Sequence record: MW812342.1
Reading direction: 5' to 3' (one strand)
DNA length: 64,000 nucleotides
In this document: in pieces, positions 5,472 through 24,468 of the stretch
Position numbering within the stretch: the stretch's first letter is position 1
Layout: every line of letters starts with the position of its first letter
Position numbers and translations under genes: made by a program
The notes under the pieces: model-generated
The model's database searches: none
What the model saw: the letters and a program-made list of their open reading frames with translations, nothing else
Told to the model about the DNA's origin: nothing

Positions 5472-5840
5472 ATGAAACTTGATCAAGCTATCCAACAGTA
5501 TGTTACCCAATTTGACCGCCATGGTCTGTTCCTGCTGCGCTTCACTAACGAAACTCAACTGCTGGAACACAACCCAAAAACGTTCGCAGTCGTGTATGAG
5601 AACGACGGTATCGGTGAGCCGGAGCGTATGACACTGCGTAAACTGCGTCAGGACGCCATCGAAGCCAAGGTCGTTCATGTACAGCCGGTTGTCTGTGCCC
5701 AAGGTTGGCCGGGTAAGCTCGATGTCGAAGCGGACGTGGTATTGAATGTCGTGCAAGACGGTGATGCTCGCCGACTGGTGCCGGTAAAATGGCGTACTCT
5801 CGATACCCTGCCAGACGCCGTTGAATTCACGGAGCTGTAA
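5472..5840 (+). CDS. Hypothetical protein
   Basis: 122-aa ORF with RBS TAAGGAG in a tight operon. Confidence 0.8.
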   Translation: MKLDQAIQQYVTQFDRHGLFLLRFTNETQLLEHNPKTFAVVYENDGIGEPERMTLRKLRQDAIEAKVVHVQPVVCAQGWPGKLDVEADVVLNVVQDGDARRLVPVKWRTLDTLPDAVEFTEL

Positions 5841-5842
5841 AT

Positions 5843-6583
5843 ATGGATATGCGTCCAGTCAGGTTATACCTGCTGACGGCGCTTCACGATCACTTGATGC
5901 GTCTCGGTGAGGCGCATCATATCGCGAAGACAGCATACCTGATGATTGCGCGAGAAATCGCGCGATCTGACTTACGCTGCCGTCACAAATGGTTGTTAAC
6001 GGATGTGTGTGAACGTTTGAAACAGCAAGTGGTCGGGGGCCAATCGCTCAACCATGCTCTATCCTACGTTTGGGTTTACGATGACATTCGGGACGAGATG
6101 TACGTAGATAATGCGCATCGTGTTGTGAAACTAATCGAACGGGTGACGAACGATTACTACGCAACCACCGGCGGGCTGACAACGGAGGTGAATATCCAAA
6201 GCACCATTTTGGATTCGCTTCGTGAAACGGCCAATCATCTCGATGCCCCCATTCTTTTTTCTACCGACTACGACCTGTTGCGTTTTCGTATCTGGTTTAC
6301 GGGGGAAATGGATGACGTCGATATGCACGAGTTGTGGTGTCATGACGTGCACAGCATGGACGAATGGACTGGCCTCCTTACGACCTACCCATCGGAGAAG
6401 TACCTGTGGCGGCAAGATCACGAGCCGTTAATTCCAGAACGTCTGAATGATGAAGGTTACGACGTCGAAGCATTCTGGAAAAATATCTCGATTCTCAGTT
6501 TGGACAAGCTCTACGTTATGGCGAAGGAGCGTCTGTGTTCCGAGGATGACGACCGATGCGAACTGTACACAGCTATGCACTGA
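5843..6583 (+). CDS. Hypothetical protein
   Basis: 246-aa ORF abutting its neighbours. Confidence 0.75.
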   Translation: MDMRPVRLYLLTALHDHLMRLGEAHHIAKTAYLMIAREIARSDLRCRHKWLLTDVCERLKQQVVGGQSLNHALSYVWVYDDIRDEMYVDNAHRVVKLIERVTNDYYATTGGLTTEVNIQSTILDSLRETANHLDAPILFSTDYDLLRFRIWFTGEMDDVDMHELWCHDVHSMDEWTGLLTTYPSEKYLWRQDHEPLIPERLNDEGYDVEAFWKNISILSLDKLYVMAKERLCSEDDDRCELYTAMH

Positions 6584-6972
6584 TGATGTTTCAGGCGTGG
6601 TGGCCCAAACTCACGGAAGGGATTGTCGGCGTTTCCGGGTGGGAATATGTGCTCGTGACCTCGTACCTGATAGAGTGTGCGAAGAACGGCCTTATTCTCC
6701 CCAGTGAGCGTCGACAAATGCTGCTCATGGAAAAGCTGGACTCCATGTACCCCGCAGCCATGTTCCAACATCGCAAGCATCTGTTTCATTCTGCGCTTGT
6801 TGAGTTGGGTGAAGAACGCACCGCGGTTATCGTAAAGAAAATACGCGATGAGATGGTTAATGTGTCACGCGAACTTAATCTGGTTTGGGTCGGTGTGTCT
6901 TATACGCCGTTAGATGTTGTTCGTTGTCGCTACCAAGTTAATTTCGCAGCCACAACCCGAGGTGTTGCATGA
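6583..6972 (+). CDS. Hypothetical protein
   Basis: TGATG coupling to the upstream stop gives start 6583. Confidence 0.7.
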   Translation: MMFQAWWPKLTEGIVGVSGWEYVLVTSYLIECAKNGLILPSERRQMLLMEKLDSMYPAAMFQHRKHLFHSALVELGEERTAVIVKKIRDEMVNVSRELNLVWVGVSYTPLDVVRCRYQVNFAATTRGVA

Positions 6973-7508
6973 AAGTGTTATTAGACTTCTCGTTATCCGA
7001 ATCTCGAGCCAAGCTCGATGCGGTTTTGCTAACGATGAAGAAGTCATTGGAGTTTGAAGTCCACAACGCACTCGCCGAATATGAGCGTTCGTTAAAAGTG
7101 GAAACGGGCGATACCTATTGTCTGGTCGATGCCGAGGGGATTGTCAAAACCACGGTCGACTCGATGATTGATAAAGTCCGTAACGTCCTCAGTACCCCGC
7201 TGCCGGTAATGGTAGCCCACTGGGACGATGGGGCCGATGTGCTTGACCTGATTCGTGATGCCTTTGAAAAAGGTGCGGCGAACATGGAAAGTATGGCGCT
7301 GGGTGATGCTACCGAGGTGTACGTGACTGTCCCCATGAAAGAGGGCGGGAACAACTTTGAGATGGTGTCGCTGCACGATGTGCTGAACACGGCCAATTCG
7401 CAGGCGATTGACAAGATACTGAATGATGCGTGCGTTAAAGTGCGCGACATCTGTATCAAGGAGATTGTCTACATTCAGGAAAAACTCTTAAAGGGAGCTA
7501 CCTGGTGA
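6969..7508 (+). CDS. Hypothetical helical protein (possible paralog array member)
   Basis: ATGA overlap, RBS GAGGTG; N-terminus similar to the next two ORFs. Confidence 0.8.
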   Translation: MKVLLDFSLSESRAKLDAVLLTMKKSLEFEVHNALAEYERSLKVETGDTYCLVDAEGIVKTTVDSMIDKVRNVLSTPLPVMVAHWDDGADVLDLIRDAFEKGAANMESMALGDATEVYVTVPMKEGGNNFEMVSLHDVLNTANSQAIDKILNDACVKVRDICIKEIVYIQEKLLKGATW

Positions 7509-8110
7509 AACTCCACATTAACCTGACCCCCGGTAACTTTGAAAAGCACTGGCCGGAAATGATGATGCAAATCCGTGAATCTATGGATGCGTTTCTTCAT
7601 GATCACAATGAGTTATCGGTTGAGGACAACAAACTCCTCACCATGTTACTCTGGTCAACGATGTTTCATCCTATATCACAACTGTCTAAATCCATGCTGA
7701 CGTTTGAATTTGACAATACCGATGTCAAAGACAAGCGTATCGAGAAGAACATCGAGATTATCACCCTCGATACCAAACTCGACAGCGTACTGGAAGACAT
7801 TCGTGACGAGCTGAATGTGGAGCTGTTGAAGTTCCACAAAGAAGCCATCACGGAAAATGAAACGCTCAACGCGTGGGTGCAGACATGGACGGACGAGGCC
7901 CGCAATAAACTGCGTGATGATCTGGTCGAGTTAGTTCATCGCCATATCTCGACACTGCTTGACGTGTTGTTCGCACAGCTGACGGTGGAAATCATCGAAA
8001 TCTCCTTCCGCTTCCGCCCGCGTCCGGTGTTAGTATCAACAGACGGTGGCGCGAAGATGGTCGGGCGTATGTCGGATATGATTCAGGACGTCCCTGACGA
8101 ACCGGCTTAG
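7505..8110 (+). CDS. Hypothetical helical protein (possible paralog array member)
   Basis: GTGA overlap, RBS GGGAG. Confidence 0.8.
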   Translation: MKLHINLTPGNFEKHWPEMMMQIRESMDAFLHDHNELSVEDNKLLTMLLWSTMFHPISQLSKSMLTFEFDNTDVKDKRIEKNIEIITLDTKLDSVLEDIRDELNVELLKFHKEAITENETLNAWVQTWTDEARNKLRDDLVELVHRHISTLLDVLFAQLTVEIIEISFRFRPRPVLVSTDGGAKMVGRMSDMIQDVPDEPA

Positions 8111-16210: not shown

Positions 16211-17245
16211 ATGACAAACGTTGAAATGAGAGAACTGCGTGACCTGATTGCACTGGTACGCGGTTCGGACTGGGAACCCGAAGTACGCGATCGCATTGTG
16301 GCACGGTTAATACTGGCGCAGCTTCAAGGGCCAAACTGGACACATGCGTTCAACAAATCACTGCCACTCGAACAGCGGGTGATGGGGTTTGATTCAAGCG
16401 CAATGGATAGAACGTTAGCGAGTAGACTGGCGACATCGCTGGGCTTGTCGTTGGTCGAGAAAATCGGCCAGTTCGATCCGATTTGGTTTGATGGGGAACT
16501 CTCCTACCTGTCTGCGAATCCCCAGTTCCGTGAGAAGATTGTGCGTCGTTTACGCTCAGTCGGTTATCGGAGCTTGGCCACAGACGCGATACCGTCAACC
16601 GACGGTCTCAACCATTACAACATTTATTCGCAGTCTCGCAACCCGGTAGGTCAACTGGCAAGTAACTTTGCCTCCAGCCCTGATGGGTCGTACTTTGATA
16701 CCCCGCATGGCCCGTATCGTACGCTGGAAGGTTATTACCACGTCCTGCGTGTGCTGGATTACTTTCTGCACATTGATGCCGAGGAGGAAATCTCTGATTA
16801 CCCCCTCCATCAGTTCAATGGCGATCCTGTCGAGCGTGACCTGTTTATCCTTGAATGCTTCAGCATGAAGTTTCCTGAGATTGGCCGGATGCGTGAGGTA
16901 GATGGGGCAGAAGGGATACGGGCAGGTCGGCTGTTGAAGAAAGCGGTTTACGGTGGGTCACGTTACCGTCCGGGTGCATTCTCTGAGCATGTCGAGCGCT
17001 GTTTTATGAAGGCGGTCGTGCACAAGTTGCATAAACTTAAACTGGATGGCGTGTGTCTTGGGAATATCATGGCTGAGATTCATCAGCAAGGCATTCCGTT
17101 TGAGCACTACTACGTGATGAACGGGAAGATTCACATTCCAAACCATGCGGACTGGTTACCCGGTCTGTATACGCGGATTGTGGAAAACATCGACCCGTAT
17201 GCCGTGGACTTCGACCCAGAGGACGTCATCAAACAACTGGGGTAA
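16211..17245 (+). CDS. NADAR-like (T4 gp30.3-type) domain protein with N-terminal extension
   Basis: LASNFA...F.TPHG.Y.TLEGYY and later GAEGIRAGR parallel the recalled T4 gp30.3 pattern LSNFA..PF..DG..F..LEGF...GLAAQQAGR. Confidence 0.55.
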   Translation: MTNVEMRELRDLIALVRGSDWEPEVRDRIVARLILAQLQGPNWTHAFNKSLPLEQRVMGFDSSAMDRTLASRLATSLGLSLVEKIGQFDPIWFDGELSYLSANPQFREKIVRRLRSVGYRSLATDAIPSTDGLNHYNIYSQSRNPVGQLASNFASSPDGSYFDTPHGPYRTLEGYYHVLRVLDYFLHIDAEEEISDYPLHQFNGDPVERDLFILECFSMKFPEIGRMREVDGAEGIRAGRLLKKAVYGGSRYRPGAFSEHVERCFMKAVVHKLHKLKLDGVCLGNIMAEIHQQGIPFEHYYVMNGKIHIPNHADWLPGLYTRIVENIDPYAVDFDPEDVIKQLG

Positions 17246-17251
17246 ATCGAT

Positions 17252-17911
17252 ATGTCATTTCTTGACACCATTGATGAACTGGAACGGGGTGAAGAAGAAG
17301 GTGTCATGAAAGTGGCACGGGAATCTATCTCGACCGAAACTGAGAAAGAGTATTGTCTTTGGGTGAAGCCAACCGAAGAAGGCTGGAACTGGTTACGTGA
17401 GCAGCAGGGGTCGATGTATATTGATACCCTGATGCCCATTAACCGGGGCAAGCGTCGCGTGCGGTTAACCGAAGACCATAAAGCCGTGCTGACCGTGAAG
17501 CGTTTTGCCGATGAAGGGTGTATCGAAGAAAACTCCGATATTGGGTTTGACACGGCGCTCACCTTTTATCAGGACGACTTCGTGTCGCATTTGGTCAAAC
17601 GCATCCATTTACCTGCGGGTGAGTTAGAAGTCAAGGGTGGTAAGCACTGGGACATCGACGTGTTCTATCGCGCCGGTGGACATCCCCAATTGCTGAGCAC
17701 CGACGACTACGATGCGCTGCTTAACACCATGAAGCAAGGTAGCTCGTATGGCGAATGGGTGAAGGTCGAGTTGGAAGTTGAGCGGTTTGAAATGGAATCG
17801 ATTCGCGAACATATCCCGTTCGCGGTTGAGGACGTCATTCCCTCACGCCCAACGAAGCCGGAAGACCAGGAGTTCATTCGTAACTACTGGGACGTGGAAA
17901 CACGTCTGTAA
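17252..17911 (+). CDS. CYTH-domain (triphosphate tunnel metalloenzyme) protein
   Basis: N-terminal ExExEY (TETEKEY), RVR, LTVK, IEE, WDIDVF and C-terminal VELEV motifs. Confidence 0.8.
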   Translation: MSFLDTIDELERGEEEGVMKVARESISTETEKEYCLWVKPTEEGWNWLREQQGSMYIDTLMPINRGKRRVRLTEDHKAVLTVKRFADEGCIEENSDIGFDTALTFYQDDFVSHLVKRIHLPAGELEVKGGKHWDIDVFYRAGGHPQLLSTDDYDALLNTMKQGSSYGEWVKVELEVERFEMESIREHIPFAVEDVIPSRPTKPEDQEFIRNYWDVETRL

Positions 17912-17917
17912 TAGATG

Positions 17918-17950
17918 ACCACTCCTTCGGGAGTGGTTTTCTTTTTTCTT
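17918..17950 (+). terminator. Intrinsic terminator, UUCG loop
   Basis: ACCACTCC-TTCG-GGAGTGGT followed by a T-rich tract. Confidence 0.85.
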
Positions 17951-17978
17951 TTTACGCCATGATGGCTAACTATGTAGA
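17948..17978 (+). promoter_or_regulatory. Putative middle-class phage promoter CTTTTTACG-N14-TATGTAGA
   Basis: Identical boxes and spacing to 9431-9461; heads the thyA operon. Confidence 0.7.
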
Positions 17979-17998
17979 AATCCTAAGGAATAACTAAA

Positions 17999-18427
17999 AT
18001 GAATACACTGTCTTTCGAAGCGGGTAAAGGGTTAAGCGTTAACGGCCATCTGGTACCGGATACCAACAACCACCATTTTGAGAAGCTCTATCGCCGTATC
18101 GGCGTGGGGCGCAAGGTCAACCTGAAAGTCACCAACGAGATTGCCCTCAATGGCAACGTGGCGGACTTAGGGCCGATGTATGGCTTCCGCCCAAGCCAAG
18201 ATGCTGCGGCTGCGCTGTTGCAACACGGAGAGTTCAGCAGCGGCGTGTACGCGTTCCGTTTACTCGGTTCGCTGCGCCGTGTGTCGAACAAACACGTTGG
18301 TCAGGGCATGACACCCACCGTTTTACAATCCGGCGAAATTATCGTCCTCGTACATTCCAATCACGAACACGCTTCGGGCTTGGATTTCATGATTAGCTAT
18401 TCCGAAGTGGAGAGTGCAGATGTCTGA
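17999..18427 (+). CDS. Hypothetical protein
   Basis: 142-aa ORF, RBS TAAGGA. Confidence 0.8.
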   Translation: MNTLSFEAGKGLSVNGHLVPDTNNHHFEKLYRRIGVGRKVNLKVTNEIALNGNVADLGPMYGFRPSQDAAAALLQHGEFSSGVYAFRLLGSLRRVSNKHVGQGMTPTVLQSGEIIVLVHSNHEHASGLDFMISYSEVESADV

Positions 18428-19283
18428 TAGAACTTACCCTGTCTTAAACAACTTTGAACGTGTCGATGCATGGAACACCGAATCCGACATTTATCGCCAC
18501 GGTAATGTTCATCACCAATCTCTGAAAATGTACCGCCATCTCGGCGAACTGTGCGAAGGTGTCCAGAAGATGAAGCAGCTGGATGTGGCCTCAGCGATGG
18601 GCAAGTTTGTGGTAGCACTGGTCGGGGTTGCCTCCTTCGCAGGTATCGACGCACAGGAGCTAGATGAGCTTTACAGCTACGCGGGCAGAAAGGCTACCGC
18701 ATGTACCCCAGCACAGGCTGCGTGCAATCTGGTGCGTTCTACGACGTCTATGGTTAATGATATCAACCAGTGGCTGTCACCTGCCGGTACACAGATGGCG
18801 AGAGCCATTGCAACATCTTCCATTTGCGAAGTTTTCTGTCTGTTGAAGCAAAATGCTTCAATCAATGCGGTTGTTCTAGACCGCACCATTGAGAACGCCA
18901 CTAATACCCTTTGTGCAAAAAGGGGCAAGATGGATGAATTTGGCATTTTCCATCCCGAAGAAGCTAAGTTTGTGGGCCGGTCTTCCGGAGAGTGGGCTTA
19001 CCTTGCCATTTCCAAAGGGCTGGAATCACGCTTTGCTGAACTCAATGCGCGCTTTCAGTACGAAAACCTAACTGGCGACCTCACCGAAGTTATCGGCCAG
19101 GAAATGAATAACAAACTCAACGAGTTGTTAGAAAAACATGTTCGAATGAAGACCGAGTTAAAGCATCATCTCACTGGCCTCAATCCATCTATTGAGGTGA
19201 CTCGAAATGCCGGTGTGGTCAATATCGTAATGAACAGCGATCTGTACCAATTACTTGCTGTATTAGGAAAGGTAAAAGACTGA
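18420..19283 (+). CDS. MazG-like NTP-pyrophosphohydrolase paralog with degenerate active site plus C-terminal domain
   Basis: Aligns by eye to 22748-23581 (W..E..I...G....Q..K.Y...GE...GV.K...; R/KG.....G.F..E) but the metal-binding acidic residues are replaced. Confidence 0.6.
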
Positions 19284-20338
19284 TGAAACAGTATTTAGAG
19301 TTAATCCATACGGTGTTGAATGAAGGTCATGAGAAGGCTGACCGTACCGGCACGGGCACCATTTCTATCTTTGGCCACCAGATGCGTTTTGACCTGCGTA
19401 AGGGATTCCCGCTGGTCACGACCAAAAAGCTGCATCTGCGCTCTATCATCCACGAACTGTTGTGGTTCCTGAAAGGCGATACGAACATCCAGTATCTGAA
19501 GGACAACAACGTCAGTATCTGGGATGAGTGGGCCGACGAAAACGGTGATCTTGGTCCGGTCTATGGTAAGCAGTGGCGTGAATGGAACGCGGACAAAATG
19601 GTGTCGATTGACGACATTAATCTTCGCCAGCATCTGGAAGATGAAGGGTACGTTGAACGCGACATGATGTCTATCGAGGGTGAGCATTATTTCCTGTACA
19701 CCAAGGTCATTGACCAGATTCAAACCGTCATCGACCAACTGCGTAACGATCCCGACAGTCGCCGTATCATCGTCAGTGCGTGGAACGTGGGTGAGCTGGA
19801 CCAGATGGCTCTAGCGCCGTGTCATTCTTTCTTTCAGTTCTATTCTCGTCCAATGATGGGTAAAGAGCTGGATAGTTATTTGGCCAAATACCTTAAAACC
19901 GACGCTCGATTGGCTGCGAAACATGCCGAACAGGTTGCCCTTTGTGAAGCCGATCCAGAAGGGAGTCACGTCAGTGCTCACATGTTCTGCCTGACCAATG
20001 ATATCCCAACGCGGGTGCTGTCCTGCCAGCTCTATCAGCGCAGTGCAGATGTCTTCCTCGGCGTGCCGTTCAACATCGCTTCCTACGCACTGCTGGTTCA
20101 CATGGTGGCACAGCAAGTGGGCATGGTAGCGGGCGATTTCATCTGGACGGGTGGTGATACCCATCTGTACAAGAACCATCTGGAGCAGGCCACATTGCAG
20201 CTTTCCCGTGTGCCGCACGATCTGCCGAAGCTTGTCATCAAAAACAAACCCGACACTATCTTCGACTATAAGTTTGAAGATTTTGAAATCGTGGGTTATG
20301 AAAGTCACCCGGCGATTAAGGCACCCGTTGCCATCTAA
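19283..20338 (+). CDS. thyA: Thymidylate synthase
   Basis: DRTGTGT, PLVTTK, ALAPCH (catalytic Cys), [34 protein letters not shown]-terminus; two large insertions. Confidence 0.98.
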
Positions 20339-20347
20339 GGAGCACGT

Positions 20348-20848
20348 ATGACCGACAACGTACTGAAGTTTCCCGGCAAACCGAATGCTCACCCAGTCGT
20401 TGTCGCGCCTCGTGAGCATCGTGCCCATTTTCCCATTCAGGCCCGTAACGGGAATGTGGGTTCGTTTACAGTACCGGCGTGTGATATGTATTGGTGGGCA
20501 GCAATTTACGAACAGGTTGCTGCTACCAACCCGTATTTCGAAAACGTCTTTTACTTTTACTCCGAACCTTACGGCTGGCAAAATCAATCCTTTACGAAAC
20601 GTAAGACGTCGTGTGAGTTGACGATTGACCGCCGAACTTTGATAGAGATTCTGAAAGCGGTGGCGTACACGCACATTCTGTCTCTTGATAGTTACCTGAA
20701 CGATGACGATTACGAATTAGTTCACGACAATGCTTTGATGGTATTGGGTGACGATTTGGAAATCGATTATGCGATGGGGATATTCATGTCCCCCACAACG
20801 AACCCTGACCGGTTCATCATTAATTTCGTGGAATGCCATAATGACTGA
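20348..20848 (+). CDS. Hypothetical protein
   Basis: 166-aa ORF, RBS TAAGGAG. Confidence 0.8.
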   Translation: MTDNVLKFPGKPNAHPVVVAPREHRAHFPIQARNGNVGSFTVPACDMYWWAAIYEQVAATNPYFENVFYFYSEPYGWQNQSFTKRKTSCELTIDRRTLIEILKAVAYTHILSLDSYLNDDDYELVHDNALMVLGDDLEIDYAMGIFMSPTTNPDRFIINFVECHND

Positions 20849-21716
20849 CAAGCAAAACACCCTGTACTTCTTCTCTGACCGCTTCTACACCATGCCGGGC
20901 GACAGCTATAGCTTTGGTATCGTGGCAGCGAAAGACACCGCTGAAGCCAAACTGATGTTGGGCACCGAGCTGGTCGATGGTTTGCCGTTGGGTAAAACCG
21001 ACGTGAGTGGTCAGGTTCTGTGTGCTGAAGAAATTCGCCACATCGATCCGCGTACCGACAGCGTCGCGAAAACCGTCACCGCTGAGCTGTGGAAACTGAA
21101 TGACGGTGTGGACGTTTCCGAGCGGGTGAAATACCTGCGCGAAACCATTTCGAAAATGCAGGGTATTGATTGCAGCAATCTGGAAGTTGACTTCACGCGC
21201 TGTCTGCGTATTCCGGGCGGTTGCACCAGTACCGGCAGCGACCTGTGGCGTGTGATGGTGAAGCACCCAGACTTCCCGAACACCGTACCGATCATGTTGT
21301 CTGCACAAGGCGACGGTTCCATCACCGGTAACGACGACGTTAACTTCACCAAACTCGGTGAGAGCGAGGAATACACCTACCACGAAAACGTAGACCGTGT
21401 TCTGACGCCTGAGTGGCTGTTACTGGACTTGCTGGAACAACACGGCCTGACCCCAGAAGACTGGTACGTTATCGCCGGTACAGCGCGCGCAGCGGCGTAT
21501 AGTGCCACTCCTGTTGATGGCTGGGAAGAAGTGGACGAAGTGTACGGACAGAACGAAAGCGCGCACGTCATTCGCTTCTGGCTGAACCCAGACTGGCAGA
21601 ACCTGATTGTGGCTGCGGTGGCAAAAGTGGTTGAATCCATGCCAAAAGAACCGCTGCCAGAAAACCTCGCTGAAGAACTGGCGGGATCTGAATCTGCGGA
21701 CGAAGCCGCAGAGTAA
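20841..21716 (+). CDS. Hypothetical acidic protein
   Basis: Start 20841 overlaps the upstream stop; N-terminal segment shared with 23614. Confidence 0.75.
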   Translation: MTDKQNTLYFFSDRFYTMPGDSYSFGIVAAKDTAEAKLMLGTELVDGLPLGKTDVSGQVLCAEEIRHIDPRTDSVAKTVTAELWKLNDGVDVSERVKYLRETISKMQGIDCSNLEVDFTRCLRIPGGCTSTGSDLWRVMVKHPDFPNTVPIMLSAQGDGSITGNDDVNFTKLGESEEYTYHENVDRVLTPEWLLLDLLEQHGLTPEDWYVIAGTARAAAYSATPVDGWEEVDEVYGQNESAHVIRFWLNPDWQNLIVAAVAKVVESMPKEPLPENLAEELAGSESADEAAE

Positions 21717-21738
21717 CTTAACGATAAAGGTGAATAAA

Positions 21739-22191
21739 GTGTCTAAGACTCTAATCAACTATGATTTAGTAGTGCAAGAACTCTCCAAAGGACTGGTTGC
21801 GTTAGACAGCAGAACTGCTATTGATTGCCACATGTTACCCCATATCGCACTAAGCGAGTTCCGCACCATCCGTTATGGAGCGGGACGGCAAAAAGGTGTA
21901 ACGGAAACTGCCGCGCAGCTGGCAGGGAAGCATAACGGTCCTGCTTTGGTGCTCACACACGCAGTCGTGCTACGGGATAGCTTTGTTGTACGCTACGCAG
22001 AAAGGTTCCCTGGTAAGAGCAACGCAACCGTTCATTGTGGTTATTTGCCTGAGAACTGGCGAACTGAAAAGTTTAGTCTCGTCGTTATTGATGAAGCGGG
22101 TTTCTTTTTCAAGAAATTTGGATACGACAAAATCTATCGGTCTCTGGTACCAGTGGTGACTGACGATGTGGTAATTCACCTTATTAACTGA
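21739..22191 (+). CDS. Small P-loop/terminase-ATPase-like protein with degenerate Walker A
   Basis: GTG start after AAAGGTG; GAGRQKGVT (Walker A-like) and LVVIDEAG (Walker B). Confidence 0.55.
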   Translation: MSKTLINYDLVVQELSKGLVALDSRTAIDCHMLPHIALSEFRTIRYGAGRQKGVTETAAQLAGKHNGPALVLTHAVVLRDSFVVRYAERFPGKSNATVHCGYLPENWRTEKFSLVVIDEAGFFFKKFGYDKIYRSLVPVVTDDVVIHLIN

Positions 22192-22199
22192 GGTTGCTG

Positions 22200-22529
22200 A
22201 TGCGTCAAATTGAAAACTTTGGGCGCGGTGAACCCACGCCTGCGCCGTGGGACGGTGAGGGACTTCCACCAGTTAACGAAATGGTGATGGTTTCAGCCAA
22301 CCAAGGTTACACATGGTTCCCAATTTGCTTATTGTGGATTGGCGAGAAATCTTTTGTCTGGCGTAATATGCAGAGTGTGGCTCATGAGGGGAATGAAATC
22401 TTCCACCAAGCCCACTACTCATGTTGGCTGTATCGTCCGTTCGTGGACGGTATGGAACGCCGTTCGTATCACCGTATTGAGGAAACAGACGATGTCTGGA
22501 AAAGATTTAAGTTCACATCTGAAGCCTGA
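22200..22529 (+). CDS. Hypothetical protein
   Basis: RBS GAGGT, ATG 22200; W..EGLPP.G/N-type phage N-terminal motif. Confidence 0.7.
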   Translation: MRQIENFGRGEPTPAPWDGEGLPPVNEMVMVSANQGYTWFPICLLWIGEKSFVWRNMQSVAHEGNEIFHQAHYSCWLYRPFVDGMERRSYHRIEETDDVWKRFKFTSEA

Positions 22530-22692
22530 GGGCGCACTGTCAGAAACCATCGCAGAACATAACCGTCAGGTTGATGAGATGGATTTGTTTAACGGTGACG
22601 TGCCGGGCGTTGGCGATGATGTGTTTGTCGAAGGCGGCGCTGATGTAGGTGCCGAAGACGACAACTGTGCAGGCGGTGCCTGCAAAATTTAA
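22492..22692 (+). CDS. 66-aa acidic micro-protein ending in an NrdA-like redox tail (DDNCAGGACKI)
   Basis: RBS GAGGA at 22479-22483, ATG 22492 (in frame with track ORF 22339-22692), followed immediately by a terminator. Confidence 0.75.
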   Translation: MSGKDLSSHLKPEGALSETIAEHNRQVDEMDLFNGDVPGVGDDVFVEGGADVGAEDDNCAGGACKI

Positions 22693-22699
22693 CAAGAGC

Positions 22700-22733
22700 G
22701 GGTGTCCTTATGGACACCCCTATTTCATTTTTT
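22700..22733 (+). terminator. Intrinsic terminator ending the thyA operon
   Basis: GGGTGTCC-TTAT-GGACACCC followed by a T-rich tract. Confidence 0.8.
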
Positions 22734-22747
22734 AAGGACTATCAGAA

Positions 22748-23581
22748 ATGCAACAGACTTTTGAGTTACCGATTGAGCATAAATCCATTATCCTGAACGG
22801 CGCGGTCATCGACTTCGTCATGCCGCAGCTGGCAGTAATCGGTAAGCGCATGTCCCGCATCACTCGTCTGGCACTCAGCAGCGAGAGTCCATTGACACTG
22901 GTTAACGGCTTTACCTTCGAAGGTGAACCTGCTGAGTTCCATGCACCATTGCGTTACCACACCAGTCTGGATTTCCACAAAGAGCCCGTCTTCCATAACC
23001 GTACCGTGCCGCTCTATCGCGTGTCGCAGTGTGTGGCCAAAGTCATCGGTTGGTCAACTGACCGCGGTATTCTGGAAAACGGCCGTTGGGACTCGCAGGG
23101 TACCAAGCTGTATGAAGAAGACGGCGAAGCAGCCACCGGCGTGGGTAAAAACAAAAAGCGTCTGATAATCGACGGCATCGGTGATGCGCTGGTTGTGCTG
23201 GTCAACGTACTGGAATTGACCAGCATCGATGCGGCAGAAATTGCCCACATCTATCAGTTGGTGCGCGACACCAAAACTGTGGTGGACAACCCGCACTACC
23301 ATTTCCACAAAATGCGTAAGAACCTGACCGAAGTGGTGGATGTGGTTTACGAATGCGAAGCCATCGATTCACCGAAGAAAGTCGAAATCGGCCGCTTAAC
23401 GCACGACGAGCGTCAGCAGATGTTGGGTCATGCCCAGCAGGCGATTCACCACGCTAACCAACTGGCCCGCCATTACGATTACTCGCTCGACGAGTGCTTC
23501 TCTCTGGCGTGGGATGAAATCAAAGACCGTAAAGGTTTCCTGAACGCCGACGGCGTGTTCATCAAAGAAGCCGACGCTTAA
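22748..23581 (+). CDS. MazG-like nucleotide pyrophosphohydrolase
   Basis: KLYEEDGEA...IIDGIGDALVVL (EE..E / D..GD metal-binding motif) and C-terminal AWDEIKDRKG...DGVFIKE typical of phage MazG-like proteins. Confidence 0.85.
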   Translation: MQQTFELPIEHKSIILNGAVIDFVMPQLAVIGKRMSRITRLALSSESPLTLVNGFTFEGEPAEFHAPLRYHTSLDFHKEPVFHNRTVPLYRVSQCVAKVIGWSTDRGILENGRWDSQGTKLYEEDGEAATGVGKNKKRLIIDGIGDALVVLVNVLELTSIDAAEIAHIYQLVRDTKTVVDNPHYHFHKMRKNLTEVVDVVYECEAIDSPKKVEIGRLTHDERQQMLGHAQQAIHHANQLARHYDYSLDECFSLAWDEIKDRKGFLNADGVFIKEADA

Positions 23582-23613
23582 TTCTCGTCCACTAACAATG
23601 CAGGAGTAGGACA

Positions 23614-24468
23614 ATGGAATACCAATTATTTCTCATCACGAACGACTTCACCAAATCCTTTGTGGATGAATCGTTTCATGCCACGGTTGTCGCACCGACA
23701 GAAGCGGCAGCGCGTTGGATTGTTGCTCAACAGTGTACTGACCTTCCGATGGAAGAAGTGCGTACTGCGGCAGCTTTTGCAGTGGGTAGCATCGAAGCCC
23801 CTGCCGAGGGAATAATTTCGTTCGAGTTCGGTCGTCGTAACCGTTTCCCGGTCGTCAGTCTCGACCCGTATAAACGTCGGGAAGAGTTCGTCGAAGTTGA
23901 GCTGCACGGTGGGATACAACCGGCGCACGGCATCAACCCGCCCGTGCCGGGTGCAGTGGTCAAATGCTTCGCGAGTCGCGAACATCCGCGTGTCGTGCTG
24001 ATCCGTTCGACCCTCAAGACCGATGTCGAAACGGTGATTGAACACGTTGGGGTGACGCAGGAAGCAACGTCGATTCAGTTGTATTCGGTACATGCGCCGA
24101 CCGCGTACAAAGAGGTAGCGAAAGGTGAGGTCTTCACGACCGAATACGTCAACCTCTTTGGCGTAGACGATTTGCTGCTCGCCCGCTCACTGATTATCCG
24201 TAATACTGAACTGGCGTACCAGAACAAACGGACTGAGGACGTCTTGCTCGAACTCCAATCTTTCCTTACGGAAAAGGGTGATCACAACAGCGGCGACGCG
24301 GGAATCAGTTTCTACCCCGGTCAGAAGCTGTCGGTTCCCGATTACGGCAAGATGTCACTTTGGGTCATGTCGTTACCGCAGGTCGTTACGCTCGATCGTA
24401 CGATTACGCAAGAGAGCCTCAAACCGATTCCGAATACTAACTGCCAAACCCTGAACACAGGAGAGTAG
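23614..24468 (+). CDS. Hypothetical protein
   Basis: 284 aa, RBS AGGAG; N-terminal segment resembles that of 20841. Confidence 0.8.
   Translation: MEYQLFLITNDFTKSFVDESFHATVVAPTEAAARWIVAQQCTDLPMEEVRTAAAFAVGSIEAPAEGIISFEFGRRNRFPVVSLDPYKRREEFVEVELHGGIQPAHGINPPVPGAVVKCFASREHPRVVLIRSTLKTDVETVIEHVGVTQEATSIQLYSVHAPTAYKEVAKGEVFTTEYVNLFGVDDLLLARSLIIRNTELAYQNKRTEDVLLELQSFLTEKGDHNSGDAGISFYPGQKLSVPDYGKMSLWVMSLPQVVTLDRTITQESLKPIPNTNCQTLNTGE

What the first reader, a model, noticed from the sequence alone, without database searches (positions are those of the whole stretch)
18420..19283. Catalytically eroded MazG paralog (pseudo-enzyme) paired with an intact copy 3.5 kb away
Seen: KMYRHLGEL...[12 protein letters not shown] versus intact KLYEEDGEA...IIDGIGDALVVL (22748 gene). 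EE to RH, D to S and D to K remove most metal ligands while the scaffold and C-terminal K/RG...G.F..E are kept, and an ~100-aa C-terminal domain is added; it is TGATG-coupled to thyA. Established: MazG-like enzymes are oligomers needing these acidic residues. Inference: a regulatory subunit, a nucleotide sponge, or a decoy for defence systems that sense or target phage MazG/dUTPase-fold proteins.
Basis: partly seen in the sequence, partly recalled or inferred. Interest (0 to 1): 0.65.

Follow-up and report, generated by a model that had tools for sequence, protein, structure and literature searches.

The report
Dead MazG-like protein beside phage thyA
A giant Erwinia phage keeps, just in front of its thymidylate synthase gene, an old and still selected copy of a nucleotide-pyrophosphatase fold that has lost every metal-binding residue; it is a modest new viral pseudoenzyme whose job is still unknown.

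Summary
The window is Erwinia phage pEa_SNUABM_10, an SPN3US-like jumbo phage. ORF 18420-19283 (X, 287 aa, phrog_10269, unknown function) is homologous to phage MazG-like NTP pyrophosphatases (hhalign 99.5%, E 3e-22). Its model is closest to dimeric dUTPases (Z 10.7, 10.3, 9.2).

All four acidic metal ligands, kept in 94-97 of 97 canonical relatives and in all 10 orthologues of the intact copy M (22748-23581), are missing in all 18 X-family clusters. R22, W161, K165 and K179 are also lost. New invariant polar residues (Y25, R39, E46, Q49, D154, R155, N159) line the old catalytic helices.

The N-domain is under strong purifying selection (omega 0.04-0.13). X lies directly upstream of thyA in four genera and one divergent contig, but is absent from Derbicusvirus.

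The ~105-aa C-terminal domain is a separate module: fused, absent, split off or duplicated. It is swapped as a cassette between near-identical phages, as are two inserts in the E. coli-like ThyA.

Best reading: a non-hydrolytic binding or adaptor protein of the thymidylate module. Function is inferred, not shown. The hetero-oligomer test could not be run. This scan made the same call earlier on SPN3US (s1-160653).

The parts
17919..17947 (+). Terminator-like hairpin (CCACTCC-TTCG-GGAGTGG followed by a T run) that closes the upstream unit
   Evidence: Read directly from the sequence.
17949..17976 (+). Promoter-like motif TTTTTAC-N15-TATGTA, the likely start of the unit holding the 142-aa gene, X and thyA
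   Evidence: Sequence. It matches the motif another first-stage note gave for this phage (s1-415298). Not tested for function.
17999..18427 (+). 142-aa gene of unknown function (phrog_9744). Its stop overlaps the X start by 8 nt. It precedes X in most relatives.
   Evidence: Omega 0.03-0.07.
18420..18962 (+). X N-domain (residues 1-181): all-alpha NTP-pyrophosphatase fold (MazG / dimeric-dUTPase-like) without the metal ligands and with a remodelled, conserved cleft face
   Evidence: hhalign 99.5%. VIA-align: 1w2y Z 10.7, 5myd Z 10.3, 2yay Z 9.2, then 1vmg Z 7.2. Column counts. Omega 0.04-0.13.
18966..19283 (+). X C-terminal module (residues 183-287 plus stop): two long helices, a beta-hairpin and a helix. 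It is cassette-like and has no clear known fold.
   Evidence: Model pLDDT 86.9. Best PDB Z 6.2, with no separation from unrelated rows. Three alleles at ~40% identity in a 90-100% identical background. Stand-alone and duplicated copies.
19283..20338 (+). thyA: thymidylate synthase with a core close to that of E. coli and catalytic residues in place
   Evidence: Pfam PF00303 E 2e-118. phmmer against E. coli ThyA structures E 1e-130, aligned in three blocks.
19589..19705 (+). ThyA insert 1 (residues 103-141, in place of E. coli 103-107). Hypervariable cassette: three alleles among five Machinavirus genomes.
19847..20014 (+). ThyA insert 2 (residues 189-244, in place of E. coli 155-157). Hypervariable cassette: two alleles among five Machinavirus genomes.
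22748..23581 (+). M: the intact MazG-like NTP pyrophosphatase (277 aa, phrog_7855) with YEEDGE...DGxGD kept in all 10 orthologues. It and X are the only two copies of this fold in the phage.
   Evidence: Omega 0.02-0.07.

Best explanation
X is a selected, non-hydrolytic derivative of the phage MazG-like (all-alpha NTP-pyrophosphatase, dimeric-dUTPase-like) fold.

Shown:
- The four acidic residues that hold the catalytic Mg2+ ions in active relatives are gone in the whole family.
- Several basic and aromatic residues of the canonical pocket are gone too.
- The polar face of the old catalytic helices is nevertheless the best-conserved part of the protein, now with a new invariant set: Y25, R39, E46, Q49, D154, R155 and N159, beside the retained W18, Q33, K36 and K50.

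Inferred:
- The cleft is still used, but for binding rather than for Mg-dependent pyrophosphohydrolysis. Arg39 and Arg155 would take the place of the metals towards a phosphate-bearing ligand or a partner surface.
- Because X sits directly in front of thyA in every genome that has it, it most likely acts as an accessory (binding or adaptor) subunit of the phage's thymidylate-supply module. Possible roles are holding a pyrimidine deoxynucleotide or tethering ThyA to other enzymes.
- The real NTP-PPase chemistry is left to M.
- The C-terminal ~105 residues are a separate, exchangeable module that also keeps to the thyA-proximal position and probably supplies a lineage-specific contact.
For: - Homology and fold.
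- Loss of ligands in 18 of 18 X clusters, against 94-97 of 97 kept in canonical relatives and 10 of 10 in M.
- X-specific invariant polar residues on helix 2 and the last helix.
- Purifying selection on the N-domain (omega 0.04-0.13, as low as neighbouring genes).
- X directly upstream of thyA in Machina-, Seoul-, Erskine- and Wellingtonvirus and in metagenomic relatives, including one contig whose upstream genes differ.
- C-module always on the thyA side: as its own ORF between X-N and thyA (L033), and as an extra copy between X and thyA (L032).
- A weakly similar module in the gene just upstream of thyA in Risingsunvirus (Foldseek E 7.8e-4, TM 0.69; hhalign E 1.5e-4, probability only 51%).
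- The phage has no trimeric dUTPase, no PF08761 match, and only X and M of this fold.
Against: - No binding, activity or interaction was measured or modelled.
- The whole gene block is syntenic in these phages, so adjacency is weaker evidence than it looks. X is just as tightly coupled to the unknown gene upstream.
- Derbicusvirus phages have a similar insert-bearing ThyA and an M orthologue but no X, so ThyA does not need X.
- The X C-domain alleles do not co-segregate with the alleles of either ThyA insert, which argues against a specific C-domain/insert interface.
- The most divergent members (P0016, P0019, P0021, and the 181-aa gene in L033) lose even R39, E46, Q49 or K50, so the new motif is not absolutely required.
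Confidence: 0.5

Rival explanations
1. X is a regulatory or structural partner of the intact MazG-like enzyme M. The two related folds form a hetero-oligomer with fewer active sites or altered specificity.
For: Both proteins share the fold and co-occur in every X-bearing genome. Enzymes of this superfamily act as dimers or tetramers (established knowledge). BFVD Foldseek aligns X to a 277-aa protein, probably the M orthologue of a sister phage, over 184 columns at rmsd 2.9 A.
Against: M is far more conserved than X (mean pairwise identity 56% against 36%), which is unlike an obligate co-evolving pair. The genes are 3.5 kb apart with variable gene content between them, while X never leaves thyA. 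Derbicusvirus keeps M without X. The tree does not place X beside M. No complex model could be made.
Confidence: 0.15
2. X is still an enzyme. The catalytic site has migrated or changed chemistry, for example a new metal or general-acid site built from E46, D154, E173, R39 and R155, acting on a different phosphate ester or nucleotide.
For: X-specific invariant polar and charged residues sit on the helices of the old active site. Purifying selection is as strong as on real enzymes. Some 'pseudoenzymes' are known to have relocated catalytic residues (review PMC10211241, abstract seen).
Against: Divergent family members lack R39, E46, Q49 and K50. The canonical phosphate-binding K165 and K179 are lost and R167 is only partly kept as Lys. 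No known family shares the new motif: the PDB sequence search, Pfam and NCBIfam were blank.
Confidence: 0.12
3. X, and especially its swappable C-module, is a player in phage-host conflict. It could be a decoy, sponge or inhibitor aimed at a host factor or defence system that senses or targets the phage's nucleotide-metabolism proteins.
For: There is cassette-like replacement of the X C-domain and of two ThyA inserts between phages whose flanks are 90-100% identical, with alleles at ~40% identity or unalignable. The C-module is gained, lost, split and duplicated. Phage MazG-like proteins can be anti-defence factors (Atd1, bioRxiv 10.1101/2022.06.09.495361).
Against: C-domain omega is 0.2-0.5, not above 1, and dS is saturated. 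The pattern can arise from recombination between old lineages at conserved flanks without diversifying selection. PADLOC is blank. The conserved N-domain, not the variable module, is the constant part. Several lineages lack the C-module altogether.
Confidence: 0.15
4. X is a decaying relic with no function of its own, kept only because of its position in an operon.
For: It evolves faster than M. It is absent from Derbicusvirus and further degraded in one lineage (L033).
Against: The frame is intact in every genome seen, across at least four genera and 18 clusters. N-domain omega is 0.04-0.13. There are 15-26 invariant columns, including polar surface residues.
Confidence: 0.03

Closest known systems
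Phage MazG-like NTP pyrophosphatases (phrog_715, phrog_1992, phrog_7855), including the window's own M and the anti-defence enzyme Atd1
   Same: Same fold and the same family by profile comparison (99.5%). Shared W18, Q33, K36, G42, K50 and G61, and the C-terminal G...G.F hairpin.
   Different: All four metal ligands and R22, W161, K165 and K179 are lost. X has a new invariant set (Y25, R39, E46, Q49, D154, R155, N159), an extra C-terminal module and a fixed position before thyA.
Dimeric (all-alpha) dUTPases: Campylobacter jejuni 1w2y, Leishmania 2yay, staphylococcal phage Duts 5myd
   Same: Best structural matches of the N-domain (Z 10.7, 9.2 and 10.3; 140-151 residues aligned). A dUTPase next to thyA would make metabolic sense. 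Staphylococcal phage Duts also have non-catalytic, protein-binding roles, going by the titles of the PDB entries 5myd and 5mil and by own knowledge.
   Different: No sequence-level membership: PF08761 finds nothing in the phage. Identity is 7-11%. Metal ligands are absent. No evidence that X binds dUTP or a repressor.
Tandem-domain E. coli MazG (3cra), in which only one of two MazG domains is reported to carry the activity (own knowledge; not checked in a paper here)
   Same: A pairing of a less active or degenerate MazG-type domain with an active one.
   Different: There the two domains are in one chain and both keep the EExxE-type motif (alignment). Here they are separate genes 3.5 kb apart and the motif is erased.
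Viral pseudoenzymes, for example herpesvirus dUTPase-related proteins (own knowledge) and those reviewed in PMC7605207 (abstract seen)
   Same: A virus keeps a catalytically dead copy of a nucleotide-metabolism fold under selection for a new role.
   Different: Different fold (trimeric beta dUTPase there), different hosts and known immune-modulating roles. No role is known for X.
T4 dNTP-synthetase complex, in which the dCTPase-dUTPase gp56 associates with thymidylate synthase and dCMP hydroxymethylase (own knowledge)
   Same: An all-alpha NTP-PPase-type protein functionally and physically tied to thymidylate synthesis. This is the model for the adaptor reading.
   Different: gp56 is an active enzyme. 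No interaction has been shown for X.

Membership tests
All-alpha NTP pyrophosphatase superfamily (MazG / HisE / dimeric dUTPase) | Helical-bundle fold recognisable by structure comparison | tested here: met
   AF2 model pLDDT 82.9. The top three of 48,161 chains are dimeric dUTPases (Z 10.7, 10.3, 9.2), followed by Sulfolobus MazG (Z 7.2), with HisE, YpjD and M. tuberculosis MazG further down among unrelated rows (Z 5.5-6.1). The tool warns that Z under about 13 for helical bundles may reflect only a common arrangement, so the fold call leans on the profile result. BFVD hits are NTP-PPase-like proteins.
All-alpha NTP pyrophosphatase superfamily (MazG / HisE / dimeric dUTPase) | Sequence or profile homology to bona fide members | tested here: met
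   hhalign X family against the canonical phage family: 99.5%, E 3e-22. The canonical family hits E. coli MazG at E 2e-6. PHROG MazG families hit X at E 1e-12 to 1e-7. Pfam MazG itself does not hit X.
Catalytically competent MazG-type enzyme | Acidic metal-ligand motif: E-x-x-E on helix 2 and D/E-x-x-D on helix 3 (the EExxE...ExxD signature) | tested here: not met
   Positions 40, 43, 58 and 62 are E, E, D, D in 94-97 of 97 canonical hits and 10 of 10 M orthologues. In X they are H, E, S, K. Across the X family they are H/Y/T/C, variable, A/S/K and N/K/R/Q.
Catalytically competent MazG-type enzyme | Mg2+-dependent NTP pyrophosphohydrolase activity | not testable with these tools
   Needs a purified-protein assay.
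Dimeric dUTPase (Pfam PF08761) | Match to the family profile and its conserved motifs | tested here: not met
   PF08761 finds nothing in the whole phage record at E <= 1. The similarity is at fold level only.
phrog_10269 (phage protein family of unknown function) | Full-length match to the family profile | tested here: met
   E 1.3e-113, residues 1-285 against profile positions 1-297 of 299.
Pseudoenzyme (sequence definition) | Homologue of an enzyme family lacking the catalytic residues, yet maintained by selection | tested here: met
   Homology. Loss of ligands. Omega 0.04-0.13 for the N-domain and 0.10-0.38 for the whole gene. Intact in 18 clusters.
Enzyme-pseudoenzyme hetero-oligomer (X with M) or ThyA-bound accessory subunit | Physical association with the proposed partner | not tested
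No experimental data were found.

The most novel reading that the evidence does not exclude
X and its movable C-module form a ThyA-directed accessory system. Its hypervariable cassettes (the X C-domain and the two ThyA inserts) would be shuffled between co-circulating jumbo phages because a host factor or defence system recognises, or is blocked by, the phage's thymidylate-synthesis proteins. That would make a dead NTP-PPase fold an immune-evasion or targeting adaptor for a core metabolic enzyme.
Probability: 0.12. Interest if true: 0.75.

Novelty: new variant of a known kind. Interest (0 to 1): 0.42.

Why it matters
Phage MazG-like enzymes are usually annotated by fold alone and assumed to be house-cleaning or alarmone-degrading pyrophosphatases.

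This family shows that a jumbo-phage lineage keeps two copies with different fates. One is an intact enzyme. The other is a long-lived, selected copy with an erased metal site and a rebuilt polar cleft, always placed before thymidylate synthase. It should therefore not be annotated as a pyrophosphatase.

If it proves to be a nucleotide-binding or ThyA-tethering subunit, it would give a first handle on how nucleus-forming jumbo phages organise dTMP supply.

The cassette-like exchange of the X C-module and of two inserts in a host-like ThyA is a separate, testable hint. It suggests that surfaces of these metabolic proteins are under lineage-specific pressure.

On present evidence it remains a modest addition to known viral pseudoenzymes.

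Tried and rejected
Neither the X-ThyA nor the X-M hetero-oligomer idea was tested.
- RNA evidence: no listed sequencing run is on record as RNA.
- Sequence search of PDB with the X profile and with M: only chance-level hits.
- Pfam and NCBIfam on X: nothing significant. PADLOC: nothing.
- ESM Atlas: busy for the C-domain and no usable hit for the upstream 142-aa gene.
- Foldseek against PDB with the full model: no match at E <= 0.001, although dimeric dUTPases were among the top rows.
- C-domain against PDB: best Z 6.2 with no separation. Recurring tail-sheath C-terminal domains at Z 5-5.8 were judged non-specific.
- Tree to test whether X is a duplicate of M: X is a long branch attached deep in the family, so this is unresolved.
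- Co-segregation of X C-domain alleles with ThyA insert alleles: not seen. A specific C-domain/insert interface was therefore rejected as the simple explanation.
- Idea that the gene upstream of thyA in Derbicusvirus is a cryptic X or a homologue of the 142-aa gene: rejected.
- Literature: no paper in the library discusses SPN3US gp228 or its orthologues.
- The word-index protein search found only close relatives. The full library search was needed to define the family.

Full report
**Identity of the window.** Bases 17000-24000 are 100% identical to Erwinia phage pEa_SNUABM_10 (MW812342.1, 238.9 kb), a Machinavirus of the SPN3US-like jumbo phages. In that record the finding's ORF is annotated only as 'hypothetical protein'.

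**The ORF.** X runs from ATG 18420 to the TGA ending at 19283 (287 aa), with a GGAG 6-11 nt upstream.
- Its stop overlaps the thyA start by one base (TGATG).
- Its start overlaps the stop of a 142-aa gene of unknown function by 8 nt.
- A terminator-like hairpin (17919-17947) and a TTTTTAC-N15-TATGTA motif (17949-17976) precede that gene.
- So the 142-aa gene, X and thyA look like the head of one transcription unit. Tight coupling is therefore not specific to the X/thyA junction.

**Homology.**
- X belongs to phrog_10269 (unknown function, E 1e-113). It also hits three MazG-like PHROGs at E 1e-12 to 1e-7. The second copy, M (22748-23581), belongs to phrog_7855 'mazG' at E 6e-118.
- X and M align at 27% identity over 110 residues (E 1e-6).
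- A profile search of 1.84 billion representatives found 17 clusters at E <= 1e-10 (16 at <= 1e-30). These plus the window's own sequence make the 18-row X-family alignment. After a gap come about 100 canonical MazG-like proteins at E 1e-10 to 1e-3.
- Profile-profile comparison of the X family with 30 of those canonical proteins gives 99.5% probability, E 3e-22, over 174 columns.
- The canonical profile reaches E. coli MazG (3cra, E 2e-6), Sulfolobus MazG, a Thermotoga MazG-related protein and YpjD.
- One public annotation (pSal-SNUABM-04) already notes a CDD NTP-PPase_SsMazG domain in the orthologue.

**Structure.**
- An AlphaFold2 model of X on an 11-row alignment has mean pLDDT 82.9.
- Aligned against 48,161 PDB representatives, the three best chains are dimeric dUTPases: C. 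jejuni 1w2y (Z 10.7, 151 residues), staphylococcal phage 5myd (Z 10.3, 141 of 160) and Leishmania 2yay (Z 9.2). They stand above Sulfolobus MazG (Z 7.2) and unrelated helical proteins.
- The tool cautions that Z under about 13 for helical bundles may reflect only a common arrangement, so the fold assignment leans on the profile homology as well.
- Among predicted viral structures X matches its orthologues and NTP-PPase-like phage proteins. One match is a 277-aa protein, probably the M orthologue of a sister phage (184 columns, rmsd 2.9 A). That serves as the structural alignment of the two copies.

**Catalytic erosion is family-wide.** Sequences were aligned to the X-family HMM.
- Canonical relatives keep E40 (97/97), E43 (96/97), D58 (94/97) and D62 (97/97). 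All 10 M orthologues keep YEEDGE...DGxGD.
- The 18 X-family clusters have H/Y/T/C at position 40, anything at 43, A/S/K at 58 and N/K/R/Q at 62. None has the motif.
- X has also lost other near-invariant canonical residues: R22, the aromatic at 161, K165 and K179. R167 survives only as Lys in 13 of 18. The canonical triphosphate/base pocket is therefore probably not preserved. This weakens a simple 'binds NTP but cannot cut it' picture.
- X keeps W18, Q33, K36, G42, K50, G61 and the G169...G175-x-F177 hairpin.
- X has gained its own invariant polar set: Y25, R39, E46, Q49, L54, D154, R155 and N159.
- By helical periodicity, K36, R39, E43, E46 and K50 lie on one face of helix 2, the old catalytic face. 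That face is still the most constrained surface, so I infer a remodelled binding site rather than a mere scaffold.
- Caveat: the most divergent members (P0016, P0019, P0021, and the 181-aa gene in L033) lose even parts of the new motif.

**Selection.**
- Among five Machinavirus genomes, whole-gene omega for X is 0.10-0.38. It is 0.02-0.07 for M and 0.04-0.27 for thyA.
- Split by domain, the X N-domain has omega 0.04-0.13. The C-domain has 0.2-0.5 between alleles, with saturated dS.
- Across genera, the shared domain is 36% identical on average in X and 56% in M.
- X is thus selected, but less tightly than M. Neutral evolution is excluded.

**Genomic context.**
- X lies directly upstream of thyA in Machinavirus, Seoulvirus (SPN3US gp228/gp229), Erskinevirus and Wellingtonvirus. 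Junctions range from a 29-nt overlap to a 3-nt gap.
- The same holds in metagenomic relatives, including a small contig whose upstream genes differ (L025).
- M lies 3-4 kb downstream, with variable genes between.
- The phage has no trimeric dUTPase and no PF08761 match. It has a thymidylate kinase elsewhere, and only X and M of this fold.
- Derbicusvirus phages (Phobos, CR5) have a similar ThyA and an M orthologue but no X. The gene before their thyA is unrelated.
- X is therefore lineage-specific and not a universal requirement of this ThyA.

**Origin.** X is monophyletic (support 0.999) on a long branch that joins the canonical family deep in the tree, not next to M. 'Paralog of M' in the sense of a duplication within this phage lineage is not shown.

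**The C-terminal domain is a separate module.**
- Folded alone, residues 183-287 give pLDDT 86.9 and pTM 0.80: two long helices, a beta-hairpin and a helix. There is no convincing PDB relative (best Z 6.2).
- The module is missing in Wellingtonvirus and several metagenomic clusters (181-191 aa) and replaced by a short tail in Caitlin.
- It is encoded as its own 102-aa ORF between a degenerate X-N gene and thyA in L033. It is present as an extra 112-aa ORF between a full-length X and thyA in L032.
- In Risingsunvirus, the gene just upstream of thyA (gp185) begins with a weakly similar module (Foldseek E 7.8e-4, TM 0.69; profile E 0.003; hhalign E 1.5e-4, probability only 51%). That thyA is itself split by a GIY-YIG endonuclease gene. 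I treat this as a lead, not a finding.

**Cassette exchange.** Five Machinavirus genomes are 90-100% identical in the flanks, but three short segments drop to 27-68% nucleotide identity.
- X C-domain: alleles {S10, S6}, {Huxley, pSal-04} and {Machina}, about 40% amino-acid identity between them.
- ThyA insert 1: alleles {S10, S6, Huxley}, {Machina} and {pSal-04}.
- ThyA insert 2: alleles {S10, Huxley, Machina, pSal-04} and {S6}.
- The ThyA core matches E. coli ThyA structures at E 1e-130. The inserts replace E. coli residues 103-107 and 155-157. They are hypervariable in all genera.
- The three cassettes do not co-segregate. A one-to-one interface between the X C-domain and a ThyA insert is therefore unlikely.
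- The pattern may reflect recombination at conserved flanks between old lineages, or diversifying pressure on these surfaces. The data do not decide.

**Interpretation.**
- Firmly shown: X is a real, expressed-looking, selected member of the phage MazG-like fold that cannot carry out canonical Mg-dependent hydrolysis.
- Most likely (about 0.5): it is a non-hydrolytic binding or adaptor protein of the thymidylate module.
- Less likely: a partner of M (0.15), a conflict decoy or sponge (0.15), a re-tooled enzyme (0.12), or a relic (0.03).
No RNA data or literature on the protein were found.

**Relation to earlier work of this scan.** Note s1-160653 reached the same core call on SPN3US: a dead MazG-like paralog beside thyA, probably binding nucleotides without cutting. 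My tests agree on the pseudoenzyme. They add five points:
- loss of further pocket residues;
- the dimeric-dUTPase-like fold;
- the modular C-domain;
- the cassette exchange;
- the absence from Derbicusvirus.

Noticed in passing
window 19283-20338 (inserts 19589-19705 and 19847-20014): The phage ThyA core matches E. coli ThyA structures at E 1e-130 and looks like a host-derived gene. It carries two phage-specific inserts, at E. coli positions 103-107 and 155-157. These inserts are hypervariable and are exchanged as cassettes between near-identical phages.
   Followed up: partly
window 17919-17976: A terminator-like hairpin is immediately followed by TTTTTAC-N15-TATGTA, the promoter-like motif another first-stage note reported elsewhere in this phage. 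Here it heads the unit holding the 142-aa gene, X and thyA.
   Followed up: partly
window 17999-18427: A 142-aa protein (phrog_9744, omega about 0.05) is translationally overlapped with X and precedes it in most relatives. It has no Pfam or Atlas match. It may belong to the same functional unit.
   Followed up: partly
L039 (RisingSun MF459646) 5524-7749: thyA of Erwinia phage RisingSun is split into two annotated pieces by a GIY-YIG homing-endonuclease gene (intron-like arrangement). The gene just upstream (gp185, 311 aa) starts with a module weakly like the X C-domain.
   Followed up: partly
L032 6001-6339 and L033 5454-6309: Metagenomic SPN3US-like contigs show the X C-module as a free-standing ORF. 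In one it is an extra copy after a full-length X. In the other it follows a strongly degenerate 181-aa X N-domain gene.
   Followed up: partly
L007 8437-9819 (Kwan) and L008 9116-10450 (pEa_SNUABM_11): In Wellingtonvirus the intact MazG-like protein M is 444-460 aa instead of about 280, so it carries a large extra region. The same phages have the shortest X (191 aa, no C-module).
   Followed up: no
L040 3072-3491 (Phobos) and L041 3069-3491 (CR5): Derbicusvirus phages lack X. A 139-140-aa gene unrelated to X or to the 142-aa gene sits directly before their thyA, and could be a non-homologous replacement.
   Followed up: partly
window 16211-17245 and 22492-22692: Other first-stage notes on this window (a NADAR-like protein; a 66-aa micro-protein with a ribonucleotide-reductase redox tail) lie in the same nucleotide-metabolism gene block. 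They were not examined here.
   Followed up: no
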